From positions 4,378,349-4,442,348 of the forward strand of contig NW_003314262.1 in assembly GCF_000143415.4 (NCBI RefSeq): a DNA stretch of 64,000 bases, read 5' to 3'. This document shows positions 47,588 through 57,108 of this stretch, one piece after another. The notes under the pieces were generated by a model. The model ran no database searches. It was given only the letters and a program-made list of their open reading frames with translations, and was not told where the DNA came from. How positions within the stretch are numbered: the stretch's first letter is position 1; each line of letters starts with the position of its first letter. The stretch comes from Selaginella moellendorffii. Its lineage: Eukaryota > Plantae > Lycopodiophyta. Position numbers and translations under genes: made by a program.

Positions 47588-49114
47588 ATGGATTTGGTTG
47601 TGGCCTTGTTCGTCCTAGGCATCAGCTGGGTCACAATATCACTCCTGGTTGGGAGAATTCAATCGTCGCAACGGCGGCTCCCTCCAGGTCCATTCTCTTT
47701 CCCCATTTTTGGAGCGCTGTTCTCCCTCCAGCAGCCACTCCACCACCACTTCGCAAAAATTAGCAAGAAGTATGGGCCAATTGTCTACCTCAAGATCGGA
47801 ATGGTCCCATATGTGGTGGTGAATAACAACGAAATGGCAGCTCAGGTTCTTAAGGCCCACGACCTCGAGTTTGCAAGCCGGCCGGCAGAGGAGTTCTTCC
47901 GGATTGTCAGCCACAACTGGAACGATCTCATCCTAGCGCCCATCAGTGATAAGTGGAAGAGAATGAGGAAGATTTGCAGCACACACCTGTTTAGCAACAG
48001 TATGCTGAATGCAAGCTCAGGATTTCGGGAGTCAGAGATGAAGAATACAGTCAAGACCATTTTCCAGCAATCGGGGACAACAATCAACCTGCAAGAGGTT
48101 TTCGGTAAACTCTTGTCAAATTCGTTGTGCCTGGTTCTTTTTAGCGAGCTGAGGCCGGAAGTGGTGGATCTCATTCGGAACATAACCTCTCTAAGCTTGC
48201 AATTGAACATTGGAGCCCTGCTTCCAGCACTTGACGGGCTGGATCTCCATGGAGTCTACAAGAAACTCAACAAGGAGCTCATTCCTCGCCTGAAGCTCTT
48301 GCTGGAGGATCAAATCGACAAGCACCGACGAAGGAAAGATCAAGCTGGGGACAGGTTCATTCCTGGAGACTTCACCGACGTTCTTATATCTCTGAATGAC
48401 AAAGATAATTTGTCCAACCTTTCCATCTTGGCACTGCTCTCGGTAAGTTTTATAAACATTTAGATCGTGGTCGTGATCACTTTTTCTTTCTTGCGACAGG
48501 ACATGGTTATTGCGGGGATGCAAACTTCACTAGTGACACTTGAGTGGACAATGGCGGAGCTCATAAACCATCCGTGGGTCATGTCCAAGGCCCAAGACGA
48601 GATCGACAGCGTTGTGGGGAGAGCTCGCGTGGTGCATGAGTCTGATCTTCCAAGCCTTCCATACATCGAAGCCATTGTCAAGGAATCACTGCGTCTCCAC
48701 CCTGCGGCCCCACTGGGAGTTCCTCACATGAATCCCAAGCCTGTCAAGCTGGGAGGCTACACCATCCCTGGCGGCTGCAAGGTTCTCATCAACATATGGG
48801 CCATTGGACGTGATCCCGCTCGCTGGTCCGACCCAGAAGCGTTCCAGCCGGAGCGCTTTGTCGGCTCTTCCATCTCTCCCAACGGGCAGAACTTTGATTT
48901 CCTTCCATTCTCATCGGGGAGGAGAGTTTGTGTTGGCTATCCACTCGCGATGAGATCCATCCCATTTTTCATGGCTAGTTTGCTCCAGGCATTCGATTGG
49001 AGTCCTGCTAACCCGGGCGGGATCGACATGGAAGAGCGCTCGAGAAGTATGACGATGAAGCTCAAAGCGGACTTGCTTGTCAATGCGTCCATGAGGCTTG
49101 AATGTCAAATATAA
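47588..49114 (+). CDS. Cytochrome P450, 71 clan (copy E, intact; I-helix AGMQTS)
   Basis: Exons 47588-48442 and 48500-49114; KESLR, PERF, FSSGRRVCVG. Confidence 0.92.
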
Positions 49115-50729: not shown

Positions 50730-50851
50730 TTTCCATTCTCTTACAACCGACATGACTAATCAATCAGTGGATGTATTTATTTGTTCATCAATGTATCCCA
50801 TCGTCTAGATTTTTTTGCTACTCTCTATTCTTTCTTTCTTCACGTAGAAGA

Positions 50852-52219
50852 ATGGTTCGTGAGCGCGGGCGCGTCCGCCCTCAATCGATCACGCTCCAGT
50901 TCCACGCCGCCGCTCGATGCCGCGCCGGCCAGCTCGCGATCCAGATCGAGGGAAGCGACATCCAATGCACGATGGACATGCTGTTGAGCTGCAAGCTCTT
51001 GCTGCGGCGATACCATGACGGCGAGCAGCTCCTGGACTTGGATCTCCCGGGGGGAGCCAAGACATTCCACACCATCCAGAGGTACGTCCATGGCGATGCC
51101 ATCACGCTCACGGTCGAGGCCGCCCTCGACCTCTACCTGGCGCTCCAGATCCTCGAGTGCGTCCTCCCGTTGCGCTCCCACTGCCGCGATTTCCTGCGGT
51201 CCACCGTCCTCGTCTCGTGGAAGACGATCGTGCGGGCGCTGCTTCTCATCGACTCACCCAGCGGCCGCTTGGATTGGTTCGTGGCCGAGTGCCGCTGCAA
51301 GCTCGTCGTGTTTCTCGAGAGCCTGGGCGTAGCCGAAATCGAGGACTGCCTTCGCATGAAGTTTATGAATCTCAGCCAGCCCCAGGTCCTGCGAGTGATC
51401 AAGCTCTTGCGGCAGCCAAGCGAGGGAGCTCGCAAGGCTCTCGCTCTCAACGAGAATCTCATGGAAGCTCTGGCCAGGATCTACCACCGCATTGGAACAA
51501 GGCCACGCCCAAACAAGGCGCAGCTCTTGCATCTCCTGGGCGATCTCATGCAGCATCCCCACCCCCGGCTCTACCACAGCCAAGGAGGCGAGGCTGAAAA
51601 CTTCGCGGCCTTCCTCGCGGTGGCTCTCGCTCCACTGCGCGAGGCTCCCAGCGAGCTCCTGGAGAAGTACTCGTTGGTCCTGTCCAGGCTGCGGGCCTGG
51701 GAGATGGCGCGGCTGGATCCACACTGTGTTCTCGCGATGGTGGCGCCGTGGAACGAGCTGGAGAGGTCCACGGCCCAGGCGGGCAGAGTCTTCGCGGCCG
51801 TGGAAAGGTATGTTGGTTATGTCCTCGAGCAGGATGCCAGGGGCCACGGCCGGGACGAGCATTTCAAGAAGGTGGCAAGCTTCGTTGCCTTTGTTGCATC
51901 ATCCAGTGTGGACGACTCTCACAGCAGCTCCGTGAGCGATCGTAAGAAAAAGCCAGCCACGGCCGCGACTCCAAAACCCTGCAAGCGCAAGCTGGACCTT
52001 GGATCATCCAGTGTGGACGACTCTCACAGCAGCTCCGTGAGTGATCGTAAGAAAAAGCCAGTCATGGCCGCCGCGACTCGAAATCCTGGCAAGCGCAAGC
52101 TCGGCCTCGAAGTTATATCGATCAGTAGCGACAGCGGCAACGATTCGGACGGTCACGCCATCTCCAGGTTCAAACCCAGACCTCGTAGAAGTCTCAGAAG
52201 GAAGTCCAAAGCACTTTGA
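50852..52219 (+). CDS. Divergent BTB/POZ (NPH3-like N-terminus) protein with basic, repeated C-terminal tail
   Basis: LPGGAKTFHTIQRYVHG...ALQILE...DFLRSTVLVSW resembles the NRL-family BTB segment (PGGxxxF...FCYG...FL..VVL.SW); long intronless ORF; start site uncertain. Confidence 0.6.
   Translation: MVRERGRVRPQSITLQFHAAARCRAGQLAIQIEGSDIQCTMDMLLSCKLLLRRYHDGEQLLDLDLPGGAKTFHTIQRYVHGDAITLTVEAALDLYLALQILECVLPLRSHCRDFLRSTVLVSWKTIVRALLLIDSPSGRLDWFVAECRCKLVVFLESLGVAEIEDCLRMKFMNLSQPQVLRVIKLLRQPSEGARKALALNENLMEALARIYHRIGTRPRPNKAQLLHLLGDLMQHPHPRLYHSQGGEAENFAAFLAVALAPLREAPSELLEKYSLVLSRLRAWEMARLDPHCVLAMVAPWNELERSTAQAGRVFAAVERYVGYVLEQDARGHGRDEHFKKVASFVAFVASSSVDDSHSSSVSDRKKKPATAATPKPCKRKLDLGSSSVDDSHSSSVSDRKKKPVMAAATRNPGKRKLGLEVISISSDSGNDSDGHAISRFKPRPRRSLRRKSKAL
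51898..52107 (+). repeat. Two ~105-bp tandem coding repeats (SSSVDDSHSSSVSDRKKKP...KRKL)
   Basis: Near-identical units start at 51898 and 52003. Confidence 0.9.
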
Positions 52220-52296: not shown

Positions 52297-52968
52297 CTAG
52301 TCAATGTTAGTGCCCTCAAACTGTTCTTCGATCTCTCCTCTCATAATCTTTAGCATCTCCTCCGAGATCGCGAAGCTCCTCGTGAGCACCTCGTCCAAGA
52401 CTGGGGGATCGGTTGCGAAGAGGCCGCGATTGACATGCAAGAGCCCCGGACGCTGGCTGTTGAACGAGACGAAGGCAGACGCCGGGTTGCGGCCCACATT
52501 GAGCTGGAAATGCACAAGCCCCCGAGGGAACACAAACAAATCTCCGCAAGTCAGGTACGTAGCATACAATTTGTAGTCCGTGTCCACGAATCCCACGTAC
52601 ATGAGATCGCCCTCGAAGAGGTAGAACGTCTCCGAGGCCCGGGGATGGACGTGCGGGGGATTCATCCCATACTTGGCCGCGTAGTCTGCTCGCGCCGAGG
52701 ACAAGCCCATGGTGTTCACCCCTGGAAACTCCTCCACGCTCGCGCGGGTGATCCACAGTCCCAGCTCGTTGTTGGTGTTGCCGCGATTTGCGAGGCGCGA
52801 GAACTTGAAGTCGCTGGCGGTCGTGTTCTCGCTCGGCTTGCAGGGAAAGCCGTTGACTTGGATCTCCGAGTCTAGATCCGCAACGCAGTGATCCTGGAGT
52901 GGATCTGGATCGGCGGCATTGGCGAGAAGTAGCAGCAAGAGCAGCGATGCGGCGAAAAGAGAGATCAT
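52297..52968 (-). CDS. Germin-like protein (cupin), intronless
   Basis: Signal peptide, DPDPLQDHCVAD, NGFPCK, FPGVNTMGLS, germin boxes PPHVHPRASE and FPRGLVHFQ. Confidence 0.93.
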   Translation of the reverse strand: MISLFAASLLLLLLLANAADPDPLQDHCVADLDSEIQVNGFPCKPSENTTASDFKFSRLANRGNTNNELGLWITRASVEEFPGVNTMGLSSARADYAAKYGMNPPHVHPRASETFYLFEGDLMYVGFVDTDYKLYATYLTCGDLFVFPRGLVHFQLNVGRNPASAFVSFNSQRPGLLHVNRGLFATDPPVLDEVLTRSFAISEEMLKIMRGEIEEQFEGTNID

Positions 52969-53185: not shown

Positions 53186-53852
53186 ATGGCAATGGCGACC
53201 ATGGCGCTATCCCCGTCGAGTTTCTGGGCTAGCGGGCGCTTGTCTTCTCGCAAGGCAGTCGTGCTCTCACGCCCAGTTCCAATTCACCGCAAGGTAAGCT
53301 GCTGTGCGTCTCCGGCGTCGTCATTTGAGCCGAGCAAACTGGGACTGGGAGCAAAACTCCCCGGCATTTCATCACAGGTCAGCCCTTTCTCTCGATTCTC
53401 TTGCATCCTTGCTAACATCCTCGCAGCTTGGAGCGCCTCCAGTCCCTCGCCTGGACGACCACCAGGACGTCACCGACGTGAGCTGCGATGCCACCACACT
53501 CAAGCCCTCCAAGAGCGCAAAGAGGACGCGAGCGCTCCAGGGCTGCCCTCAGAAGAGGGGCATTTGCCTGAGGGTGTCGGTGGTGACGCCCAAGAAGCCC
53601 AACTCGGCTCTCCGCAAGATTGCAAAGGTCCAGCTCTCCAACAAGAACGTCGTCAACGCCTACATCCCCGGTGAGGGCCACAATTTGCAAGAGCACTCTT
53701 GCGTGCTGGTTCGTGGTGGCAGGGTCAAGGATTTGCCCGGCGTCAAGTACCACTGCGTGAGAGGGACGCTGGATCTCACCGGGGTCGCCAACCGCAAGCA
53801 GGGAAGATCAAAGTATGGCACGAAGAAACCCAAGGACGCTCCAAAGAAGTGA
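53186..53852 (+). CDS. rps12: Nuclear-encoded organellar (bacterial-type) ribosomal protein S12 with N-terminal targeting peptide
   Basis: Exon 1 from 53186 spliced to 53427-53852; [44 protein letters not shown]. Confidence 0.92.
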
Positions 53853-55805: not shown

Positions 55806-56816
55806 CTAATTTACCATTGGAGTCAATAAATCGGCACAATTACCACCCATGCCTACCAGCGATTTACTAATGCCCAGCGTTTTCTTCGCGAGATTGAATT
55901 CCAGGACGTGGTCTTGCTGCTGGAACGTTCCAATCGCCGGGGTGGAATCCTCGCCCCCATTGACAATCCCCACGCAAAACAATCCGGGCTCTCGCGTGGG
56001 CACCAAGTAATTCGCCGCCCCAATCTCCCACACGAATCCCCCGGCAAACGCGAGCCTGATCGTCGGCAGGCTCTCCATCGCCGCCGCCGAATCGATCCGG
56101 TAGCAGAGGTCGAGCGCCCCAAATCGAGCGTTGGCGCGGCTCACATTGGATTGGGCGACAAGGCGATCGCGCAGGGCTCTATAGGACGCGTCTGGTAGGG
56201 CAGTGTAGCGGCGATGCGTCCCAAAGAGGGCATCGCGATCAAGCGCTATCCTCACGCCACCCAATTCAATGCTTGCCACCCGAGCACTGTAAAAGCCTGA
56301 CGATGCTCTCAGGCGCGAAAGCCCTAATTTTAAAATTTTAAATCCCCGGCCACTCGCGCCAAATCTATAGCTGGTGGCGCCAAAAAAGAGAGCGCCATAG
56401 CCGGCAGAGGGCAAGCAGTAGGAGAAGGTGAGAGGGAGGCCAGCTGCCCTCGCCAGCTGGGCGTGTAGGGCTGACTCAGCAGGGCCCAGGCCAGCGATTC
56501 GTACGGGGGCGCACGCCACCTGGATCTTGCGTAGGACGACAGGTGGACCAGTGGTGGTGGAGAGCGTGAAGCTTGTGTTTGCCAGCGTGGGCTTGGAGCA
56601 GGGATAGAGAGGGAGCGTAGCGCCGGTGTCGATCGTGAATGGCGTGGGCTTTGGATGATCGCCCTTGCGATGGATGGCGAGAATGGCGAGGAAGCTTTGA
56701 TCGCCGGGCTCGCTCGTCGTTGGGAGGCGAGAGGAGGGCTGAATTGGGGCAACGAGCGCGGCATTGGCGATGATGCCATGAAAGAGCCAGAGAAAGGGGA
56801 GGATCCGGGTGATCAT
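55806..56816 (-). CDS. Secreted aspartic-protease-like / xylanase-inhibitor (TAXI/XEGIP fold) protein, probably non-catalytic
   Basis: Signal peptide, FTIDTGA, GLG, FSYCL, LDLCY, LPTIRLAF, IGTFQQQDHVLEFNL; the second Asp motif is replaced by ALFGT. Confidence 0.8.
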   Translation of the reverse strand: MITRILPFLWLFHGIIANAALVAPIQPSSRLPTTSEPGDQSFLAILAIHRKGDHPKPTPFTIDTGATLPLYPCSKPTLANTSFTLSTTTGPPVVLRKIQVACAPVRIAGLGPAESALHAQLARAAGLPLTFSYCLPSAGYGALFFGATSYRFGASGRGFKILKLGLSRLRASSGFYSARVASIELGGVRIALDRDALFGTHRRYTALPDASYRALRDRLVAQSNVSRANARFGALDLCYRIDSAAAMESLPTIRLAFAGGFVWEIGAANYLVPTREPGLFCVGIVNGGEDSTPAIGTFQQQDHVLEFNLAKKTLGISKSLVGMGGNCADLLTPMVN

Positions 56817-57108
56817 GGCGGAAAGGAATGGAAGATCTCCTAGGAGCAGCAGCAATGAATGTAGAAGCCTTGATGTGGTGCTTAAAAGCAATGGCAGTGT
56901 CTCCCATTCCATTCCTTGGTGTTCAAGCTTGTCTCCCATGACTTTGGAGTAAACTTCACGGATTTGATTTGAAACTTCGCGCCAACTTTTCTAGGGCTTC
57001 ACAGCAGGAATATTTCTAACGAGGCTTTGTTGGGTTTTCCAAGGAAACAGATACACGACGAAAGTTTCCCTTTTGCGATTCGGCCTTTCGTCTTTTAGGT
57101 GATCCGCC

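What the first reader, a model, noticed from the sequence alone, without database searches (positions are those of the whole stretch)
53186..53852. Mitochondrial-type S12 carrying a chloroplast-like transit peptide: possible cross-organelle replacement
Seen: the core has mitochondrial-type residues (RTRAL, CLRVS, RKIAKVxLSN, PGEGH, GVKYHC) mixed with plastid-like ones (GCPQ, VRGTLD, QGRSKYGxKKPK). The leader starts MA, is Ser/Ala-rich and acid-free, and has RKVSC/CA, like a plastid transit peptide. Known: rps12 is normally encoded in both plant organelles, and mitochondrion-derived replacement of a plastid ribosomal protein is documented for RPS16. From memory (to verify), Selaginella organelles have lost many ribosomal protein genes. 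Inference: a transferred mitochondrial rps12 retargeted or dual-targeted to the plastid and converging on the plastid sequence.
Basis: partly seen in the sequence, partly recalled or inferred. Interest (0 to 1): 0.75.

Follow-up and report, generated by a model that had tools for sequence, protein, structure and literature searches.

The report
Mitochondrial-type S12 with chloroplast-style leader
A spikemoss nuclear gene encodes a second copy of the mitochondrial-lineage ribosomal protein S12 with a chloroplast-style import leader; because the chloroplast genome has lost its own S12 gene, this copy probably supplies the chloroplast ribosome, but its location is untested.

Summary
Window 53186-53852 (+) is an annotated two-exon nuclear gene of Selaginella moellendorffii (scaffold GL377566.1). 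It has a 64-aa leader exon, a 49-nt GT-AG intron, and a 141-aa exon holding a complete bacterial-type uS12 domain.

In the tree the protein sits inside the green-lineage mitochondrial S12 clade (100/98). Grouping it with plastid and cyanobacterial S12 is rejected (AU p=0.024).

A paralog in the same genome, LOC9649666, is also mitochondrial-type. It has an Arg-rich presequence-like leader, whereas this copy's leader has one Arg in its first 20 residues, is Ser/Ala-rich and is acid-free to residue 47.

Published organelle genomes show no rps/rpl genes in S. moellendorffii mtDNA and no rps12 in Selaginella plastomes. The simplest reading is one paralog per organelle, a gene substitution like RPS16.

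"Convergence on the plastid sequence" is not supported. The plastid-like residues are general bacterial states, and the paralog has more of them (5 versus 3 of 15 diagnostic sites).

An unexpected feature is a ~12-codon deletion that removes the near-universal N-terminal PTxNQLxR motif.

Not shown here: plastid localisation, expression, and absence of a plastid-derived nuclear S12.

The scan had already flagged the allelic copy on another scaffold (s1-374927).

Verdict: a new member of a known kind.

The parts
53186..53377 (+). Exon 1: 64-codon leader. It starts MA, is Ser/Ala-rich, has a single Arg in the first 20 residues and no acidic residue before position 48. It has no Pfam match.
   Evidence: matches the annotated gene start
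53378..53426 (+). Phase-0 intron of 49 nt, GT..AG, with CTAAC 12 nt upstream of the AG
   Evidence: sequence read directly; 64+141 = 205 aa equals the annotated product length
53427..53852 (+). Exon 2: 141 codons plus TGA. The first ~28 residues are a non-S12 linker with an acidic stretch; the rest is the uS12 domain.
53499..53510 (+). L-K-P-S junction, homologous to the E-L-K-P-T junction of paralog LOC9649666. Directly after it the window copy lacks ~12 codons, so the PTxNQLxR motif is lost.
   Evidence: DNA alignment, (shared CTCAAGCC); protein alignment; HMM match starts at profile position 16
53511..53834 (+). uS12 domain (exon-2 residues 29-136): beta-barrel core plus basic C-terminal tail
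   Evidence: TIGR00981 191.5 bits; best PDB match Arabidopsis uS12m 6xyw, 175.8 bits; AlphaFold core pLDDT 83-89, Foldseek hits all uS12
53589..53609 (+). PKKPNSA decoding-centre loop, intact
   Evidence: invariant columns in alignment A2
53721..53744 (+). RVKDLPGV loop (streptomycin-resistance / Asp-modification loop of bacterial S12), intact

Best explanation
This is a functional nuclear gene of Selaginella moellendorffii for a uS12 that descends from the mitochondrial rps12 gene.

Shown: mitochondrial descent, an intact two-exon gene, long-term purifying selection, and a second mitochondrial-type paralog in the same genome with a different, Arg-rich leader.

Inferred history: after rps12 moved from mtDNA to the nucleus, the nuclear gene duplicated. 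One copy (LOC9649666) kept a mitochondrial presequence. This copy acquired a new first exon that acts as a chloroplast transit peptide, so its product is imported into plastids. There it takes the uS12 position at the decoding centre of the plastid 30S subunit. That substitution allowed, or followed, the loss of plastid rps12 in Selaginella. The process is gene substitution, as known for RPS16, not plastid-to-nucleus transfer.
For: Gene and genome:
- The gene model equals the public annotation on GL377566.1.
- It is a uS12 family member.

Descent:
- In the ML tree (53 rows, LG+C20) the protein lies inside the green mitochondrial clade at 100/98, and inside the subclade excluding Nephroselmis at 98/81.
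- Plastid sequences group with cyanobacteria at 100/99.
- The AU test rejects window + plastid + cyanobacteria as one clade (delta lnL 25.4, p=0.024).
- 11 of 15 diagnostic sites carry the mitochondrial state.

Paralog:
- LOC9649666 on GL377631.1 is 83% identical over the core, has 5 exons, and keeps KPTLNQLVRG.
- Sisterhood of the two copies is not rejected (p=0.19).
- They share an L-K-P junction upstream of the S12 start.

Selection:
- dN/dS between the paralogs is 0.08-0.13 with saturated dS of 1.5-2.0.
- Both decoding loops are intact.

Leaders:
- Window copy: 1 Arg and 6 Ser/Thr in the first 20 residues, acid-free to residue 47.
- LOC9649666: 5 Arg in the first 20 residues. Multiple N-terminal arginines mark mitochondrial presequences (PMC7031408).

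Organelle need:
- S. moellendorffii mtDNA has no rpl/rps genes (PMC5654404).
- rps12 is absent from all sampled Selaginella plastomes, including S. moellendorffii (PMC7827865), and from S. uncinata (PMC4174432).

Precedent in the same genus: a uL33m paralog is predicted to replace uL33c (bioRxiv 10.64898/2026.10.06.756942).
Against: - There is no localisation data, and no trained targeting predictor was available. The transit-peptide call rests on composition rules.
- I could not search the S. moellendorffii genome for a plastid-derived nuclear S12. The representative search with a plastid S12 query showed none among the best 150, but a diverged copy would fall below that list.
- The copy lacks the near-universal N-terminal PTxNQLxR motif. 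That is odd for a working uS12 of any ribosome.
- No ortholog carrying this leader was found in other species in the protein database.
- One paper says rps12 was lost independently in different Selaginella lineages rather than once (PMC6486807).
- The AU rejection is moderate (p=0.024), from only 126 columns.
Confidence: 0.58

Rival explanations
1. Dual targeting. The protein, or its paralog LOC9649666, is imported into both mitochondria and plastids, so the two copies are partly redundant rather than one per organelle.
For: Organellar translation factors are often dual-targeted. The nuclear RPS16 that replaced plastid rps16 carries a dual signal (PMC8429499). The window leader has 6 basic residues between positions 18 and 36, which is compatible with an ambiguous signal.
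Against: The two leaders have sharply different N-terminal Arg content. Both copies have been kept under purifying selection over a saturated dS, which fits specialisation better than redundancy.
Confidence: 0.17
2. Mitochondrial only. This is a second mitochondrial uS12m isoform, and the plastid ribosome gets its S12 from a plastid-derived nuclear gene that I could not see. That is the endosymbiotic gene transfer usually assumed in the plastome papers.
For: PMC4174432 attributes the missing plastid genes, rps12 included, to functional transfer to the nucleus. My tools could not scan the Selaginella genome for a third S12. The core is clearly mitochondrial-type.
Against: The leader lacks the multiple-arginine N-terminal domain typical of presequences, which the paralog has (PMC7031408). 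No plant-like, leader-bearing plastid-type S12 appeared among the best 150 representatives for a plastid S12 query.
Confidence: 0.14
3. A decaying or re-purposed duplicate. Loss of the N-terminal anchor motif means this copy no longer works as a ribosomal protein.
For: A ~12-codon deletion removes PTxNQLxR, a motif otherwise missing only from mis-called ORFs among 514 S12 sequences seen here. There are two substitutions at columns that are otherwise at least 95% invariant, T to V and R to Q.
Against: The frame is open across a correctly spliced two-exon model. dN/dS is 0.08-0.13. Both decoding loops and 47 invariant columns are kept. The identical 116-aa core is on record on two contigs, presumably the two haplotypes.
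Confidence: 0.07
4. Plastid-derived gene. This would be the transferred plastid rps12 itself.
For: A few plastid/bacterial-state residues ([13 protein letters not shown]) and the chloroplast-like leader.
Against: The tree places it in the mitochondrial clade (100/98). The AU test rejects the plastid/cyanobacterial grouping (p=0.024). It lacks the TSGFE.TAYIPGIGHN signature shared by all 120 cyanobacterial/plastid loci fetched.
Confidence: 0.02

Closest known systems
Nuclear RPS16 of mitochondrial origin substituting for plastid rps16 (Medicago, Populus, Lupinus and others; reviewed in PMC8429499); similarly RPL20 in Passiflora and bL19/bL21 (bioRxiv 10.64898/2026.10.06.756942)
   Same: A mitochondrion-derived, already nuclear ribosomal protein gene serves the plastid ribosome, and the plastid gene is lost.
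   Different: This case concerns uS12, a decoding-centre protein whose gene is normally kept in plastomes. There are two separate paralogs with different leaders rather than one dual-targeted product. Localisation has not been tested.
Selaginella uL33m paralog predicted to replace uL33c (bioRxiv 10.64898/2026.10.06.756942)
   Same: Same genus and same logic: the plastid gene is lost and a mitochondrial-type nuclear paralog has a predicted plastid signal.
   Different: A different protein. The text of that preprint mentions uS12 replacement only for Apicomplexa, not for Selaginella. Its Table 2 and supplements could not be read.
S. moellendorffii LOC9649666 (P0010, scaffold GL377631.1)
   Same: 83% identical uS12 core and the same mitochondrial-type signature. 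The S12 domain lies in one terminal exon, and the L-K-P junction is shared.
   Different: It has a 114-aa, four-exon, Arg-rich leader and retains PTLNQLVRG. It is the likely mitochondrial isoform.
Plant mitochondrion-encoded uS12m (Arabidopsis 6xyw, Brassica 9gyt)
   Same: Best PDB sequence match (175.8 bits). It shares CLRVS, RKIAKV.LSN and GVK(Y/F)HC.
   Different: It is mtDNA-encoded, has no leader and starts MPTxNQLIR.
Plastid uS12c (trans-spliced rps12; spinach 5mmj)
   Same: The presumed working position in the 30S subunit, and a general uS12 fold.
   Different: It is of cyanobacterial descent (TSGFEITAYIPGIGHN) and plastome-encoded. The window protein does not group with it.

Membership tests
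Bacterial-type uS12 (Pfam PF00164; NCBIfam TIGR00981 rpsL_bact) | Profile HMM score above the curated cutoff | tested here: met
   PF00164 136.7 bits (cutoff 22.3); TIGR00981 191.5 bits (cutoff 112.95)
Bacterial-type uS12 (Pfam PF00164; NCBIfam TIGR00981 rpsL_bact) | Conserved decoding-centre loops PKKPNSA and RVKDLPGV | tested here: met
   Both are intact and lie in invariant columns of alignment A2
Bacterial-type uS12 (Pfam PF00164; NCBIfam TIGR00981 rpsL_bact) | Beta-barrel (OB-like) core fold | tested here: met
   AlphaFold core pLDDT 83-89 with five strands; all top Foldseek PDB hits are uS12 chains
Bacterial-type uS12 (Pfam PF00164; NCBIfam TIGR00981 rpsL_bact) | N-terminal (M)PTxNQL(I/V)R extension motif | tested here: not met
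   The HMM match starts at profile position 16. A ~12-codon deletion relative to the paralog removes the motif. It is a typical feature rather than a curated criterion, so family membership stands.
Green-lineage mitochondrial uS12m descent | Phylogenetic placement within mitochondrial S12 of green algae and land plants | tested here: met
   Clade support 100/98; the AU test rejects the plastid/cyanobacterial alternative at p=0.024
Green-lineage mitochondrial uS12m descent | Lineage-specific residues (RTR, CLRVS, I/K in RKIAKV, LSN, PGEGH, GVKYHC) | tested here: met
   11 of 15 diagnostic columns carry the mitochondrial state
Green-lineage mitochondrial uS12m descent | Functions in the mitochondrial ribosome | not testable with these tools
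   No localisation or proteomic data. My reading is that this copy does not work there.
Plastid uS12c (cyanobacterial descent) | Groups with cyanobacterial/plastid S12 and carries the TSGFE(V/I)TAYIPGIGHN signature | tested here: not met
Chloroplast transit peptide | N-terminus uncharged, hydroxylated-residue-rich, acid-free, few N-terminal Arg | tested here: met
   First Arg at 18, first acidic residue at 48, 9 Ser/Thr in the first 40; the paralog leader has 5 Arg in its first 20. This is a rule-of-thumb test only.
Chloroplast transit peptide | Predicted by a trained predictor, or shown to drive import into plastids | not testable with these tools
   No TargetP/LOCALIZER-type tool and no experiment were available
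Plastid gene substitution by a mitochondrion-derived nuclear paralog | The plastid gene is lost from the plastome | not testable with these tools
   Taken from the literature only: PMC7827865 (rps12 absent in all sampled Selaginella, including S. moellendorffii) and PMC4174432. PMC6486807 words the loss as lineage-wise.
Plastid gene substitution by a mitochondrion-derived nuclear paralog | Two nuclear paralogs of mitochondrial descent with different leaders | tested here: met
Plastid gene substitution by a mitochondrion-derived nuclear paralog | No plastid-derived nuclear copy in the same genome | tested here: inconclusive
   None appeared among the 150 best representatives for a plastid S12 query. 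The genome itself could not be searched.
Plastid gene substitution by a mitochondrion-derived nuclear paralog | The product resides in the plastid ribosome | not testable with these tools
   Needs GFP fusion or ribosome proteomics

The most novel reading that the evidence does not exclude
In Selaginella the only uS12 of the chloroplast ribosome is a retargeted paralog of the mitochondrial uS12m. It works without the otherwise universal N-terminal PTxNQLxR anchor. That would make it a replacement of a decoding-centre protein, encoded by one of the most stubbornly retained plastid genes, in a photosynthetic land plant.
Probability: 0.5. Interest if true: 0.65.

Novelty: new member of a known kind. 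Interest (0 to 1): 0.5.

Why it matters
rps12 is normally kept in land-plant plastomes (from my own knowledge, even in many non-photosynthetic plants). The plastome papers attributed its absence from Selaginella plastomes to plastid-to-nucleus transfer. If the plastid instead runs on a mitochondrion-derived uS12, three things follow.

- Even a decoding-centre protein is interchangeable between organellar ribosomes.
- Selaginella gains another case beside uL33 and tentatively uS15, marking it as a hotspot of cross-compartment ribosome remodelling.
- There is a natural test of how much of the uS12 N-terminal extension a ribosome needs.

It also gives a concrete candidate for leader-GFP and ribosome-proteomics experiments.

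Tried and rejected
- **Read evidence.** I did not repeat it, so read laying was not used and I have no expression or splice-junction reads.
- **Orthologs carrying this leader.** A word search scored on exon-2 residues 1-60 returned only the window's own 116-aa fragment and ordinary S12s. Either no ortholog is in the database or the leaders have diverged too far.
- **A plastid-derived nuclear S12.** I ran the exhaustive representative search with Coffea plastid uS12c. The best 150 hits were bacterial S12s with over-extended ORFs, unspliced plastid artefacts and algal plastid forms. None was plant-like with a Ser-rich leader. This says little about Selaginella itself.
- **Convergence on plastid residues.** Tested and rejected.
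- **Accelerated evolution of this copy alone.** Rejected: end branches are 0.71 versus 0.73 for the two paralogs.
- **Shared intron position with the paralog.** Not found; the introns lie 25 and 12 codons upstream of the junction Pro.
- **Papers not held.** Smith 2009 (Plant Mol Biol) and Xu 2018 (Mol Plant), which list nuclear homologs of lost plastid genes, are not in the library. The supplements of the 2026 preprint are not held either.
- **Fold search.** It confirms uS12 but cannot separate mitochondrial from plastid type.
- **Joined protein.** The joined 205-aa spliced protein was never built or searched.

Full report
**What is there**

The span 53186-53852 on the + strand is a two-exon gene.
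- Exon 1 (53186-53377) encodes 64 residues.
- A 49-nt GT..AG intron (53378-53426) follows in phase 0, with a CTAAC branch-like site.
- Exon 2 (53427-53852) encodes 141 residues and a stop.

A look-up of the neighbouring germin-like protein placed the window on Selaginella moellendorffii assembly GCA_000143415.2, scaffold GL377566.1. The fetched locus is an exact reverse-complement substring of the window. The public gene call there is a 205-aa PF00164 product on exactly 53186-53852. So my model (64+141 aa) equals the annotation.

**Family**

Exon 2 matches Pfam PF00164 (3e-40) and NCBIfam TIGR00981 rpsL_bact at 191.5 bits against a cutoff of 113. The best solved relative is Arabidopsis mitoribosomal uS12m (6xyw, 175.8 bits), ahead of spinach chloroplast S12 (166.5 bits).

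An AlphaFold model gives a confident five-stranded barrel (pLDDT 83-89 for residues ~40-112) with low-confidence N- and C-terminal tails. Foldseek returns only uS12 chains. The decoding-centre loops PKKPNSA and RVKDLPGV are intact.

**Descent**

I assembled 53 sequences:
- the window protein;
- its S. moellendorffii paralog;
- 14 mitochondrial S12s of green algae and land plants, including named Nephroselmis, Coleochaete, Trichocolea and Plantago sequences;
- six angiosperm plastid uS12c;
- 12 cyanobacterial S12s translated from loci found by a signature pattern;
- 19 other bacteria.

The ML tree (LG+C20, 126 columns) puts the window protein inside the mitochondrial clade (100/98), and inside its subclade excluding Nephroselmis (98/81). 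Plastid sequences nest in cyanobacteria (100/99), next to Gloeomargarita, as expected.

Forcing the window protein together with plastids and cyanobacteria costs 25.4 log-likelihood units and is rejected by the AU test (p=0.024). At 15 columns where streptophyte mitochondrial and plastid/cyanobacterial consensus differ, the window protein has 11 mitochondrial states, 3 plastid states and 1 other. The core is therefore of mitochondrial origin.

**The 'mixed' residues**

The three plastid-state sites (T and L of RGTLD, V of GVAN), together with GCPQ and KQGRSKYG, are also the majority bacterial states. Several occur in Nephroselmis mitochondrial S12.

The paralog LOC9649666 carries five plastid-state sites out of the same 15. 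So there is no excess of plastid-like residues in the copy with the chloroplast-like leader. 'Convergence on the plastid sequence' is not supported.

**The paralog**

S. moellendorffii LOC9649666 (242 aa, scaffold GL377631.1) has the same mitochondrial-type core, 83% identical over 101 residues. It has five exons, four for a 114-residue leader and a last one with the whole S12 domain.

The two end branches are equally long (0.71 and 0.73). A sister relationship is not rejected (p=0.19). Both genes have L-K-P where mtDNA-encoded genes have the initiator Met-Pro, with an identical CTCAAGCC stretch. That is modest evidence for one transfer followed by duplication.

Between the paralogs dN/dS is 0.08-0.13 and dS is saturated at 1.5-2.0. 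The duplication is therefore old, and both copies have been under purifying selection.

**Leaders**

| Feature | Window exon 1 | LOC9649666 |
|---|---|---|
| Arg in first 20 residues | 1 (first at position 18) | 5 (first at position 7) |
| Ser/Thr in first 20 | 6 | 2 |
| First acidic residue | position 48 | position 34 |

The window leader starts MA. LOC9649666 has a hydrophobic ALGFAF patch after its early arginines.

Multiple N-terminal arginines plus a hydrophobic motif form the specificity domain of mitochondrial presequences (PMC7031408). The window leader fits the usual description of a chloroplast transit peptide. The VSC/CA site only loosely fits the (V/I)-x-(A/C)|A rule, which I recall from my own knowledge. 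No trained predictor was available, so this is a composition argument and not a prediction.

**Organelle context (literature)**

- Hecht et al. report the absence of any rpl or rps gene in S. moellendorffii mtDNA. Their table also shows rps12 missing from Isoetes engelmannii mtDNA (PMC5654404).
- rps12 is reported as not present in any of the sampled Selaginella plastomes, S. moellendorffii included (PMC7827865).
- It is absent or degenerate in S. uncinata, where the authors assumed transfer to the nucleus (PMC4174432).
- PMC6486807 words the loss as independent in different lineages, a small discrepancy I could not resolve.

Both organelles must therefore import a uS12. Two mitochondrial-type nuclear genes with contrasting leaders fit one-per-organelle most simply.

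**Comparison with what is known**

Substitution of lost plastid ribosomal protein genes by mitochondrion-derived nuclear copies is established for RPS16 and RPL20 (PMC8429499). It was recently extended to bL19 and bL21. For Selaginella itself, a uL33m paralog with a predicted plastid signal has been reported, and uS15 tentatively in lycophytes (bioRxiv 10.64898/2026.10.06.756942). That text does not mention uS12 in Selaginella.

None of the Selaginella/rps12 or uS12 papers I opened from my searches describes this gene. This scan had already flagged the allelic copy on another scaffold, with the same reading (note s1-374927). I re-derived the descent and the paralog independently but could not re-check its claim of expression.

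I class the finding as a new member of a known kind.

**An unexplained feature**

The HMM match begins at profile position 16. Relative to the paralog, about 12 codons directly after the L-K-P junction are missing. This removes the (M)PTxNQL(I/V)R motif.

Two further substitutions hit columns that are at least 95% invariant, T to V before PKKPNSA and R to Q in KVRL.

From general knowledge of 30S structures, this N-terminal extension threads into the subunit body. How a selected-for uS12 does without it is open.

**What remains unshown**

- Localisation.
- Expression and splicing.
- Absence of a plastid-derived nuclear S12 in Selaginella. The exhaustive representative search with a plastid query showed no plant-like candidate in its best 150, but it cannot exclude one.

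My odds are:
- plastid-serving substitute: about 0.58;
- dual targeting: 0.17;
- mitochondrial-only with an unseen plastid-type gene: 0.14;
- decaying or re-purposed copy: 0.07;
- plastid-derived: 0.02.

Noticed in passing
L008:315-545 (-) (NZ_LFJJ01000417.1, 1113 nt): A contig filed under 'Candidatus Burkholderia verschuerenii UZHbot4' carries an angiosperm plastid rps12 exon 2 followed by intron sequence. It is 100% identical to many uS12c proteins. This is most likely host-plant plastid contamination in a leaf-nodule symbiont assembly.
   Followed up: partly
window 52300-52968 (-) and 53186 (+): A single-exon germin-like cupin gene (223 aa, PF00190) lies head-to-head with the S12 gene. Only 217 bp separate the two start codons, so they probably share a bidirectional promoter region.
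   Followed up: partly
window 50771-52216 (+): A 482-codon ORF (annotated as a 455-aa gene) has no Pfam match at E<=0.001. Its function is unknown.
   Followed up: partly
proteins P0001-P0006, P0022: The top-scoring database 'relatives' are S12 ORFs with internal partial duplications of the domain, 169-231 aa long, from short ENA/NCBI contigs. They look like assembly chimeras and not real fusions.
   Followed up: no
protein P0243: A UniRef entry named 'Ribosomal protein S12, mitochondrial' (Mayaca fluviatilis) is 100% identical to plastid rps12 exon 2. It is probably mislabelled.
   Followed up: no
window 55809-56939 (-) and 47588-48460 (+): Neighbouring ORFs match the TAXi_N/TAXi_C aspartic-protease-like xylanase-inhibitor family and the N-terminal half of a cytochrome P450. 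These are ordinary plant genes.
   Followed up: partly
L001:3001-3949 (S. moellendorffii GL377631.1): LOC9649666 has four very short introns (53-63 nt) confined to its 114-residue leader. As in the window gene, the S12 domain itself is intron-free.
   Followed up: yes
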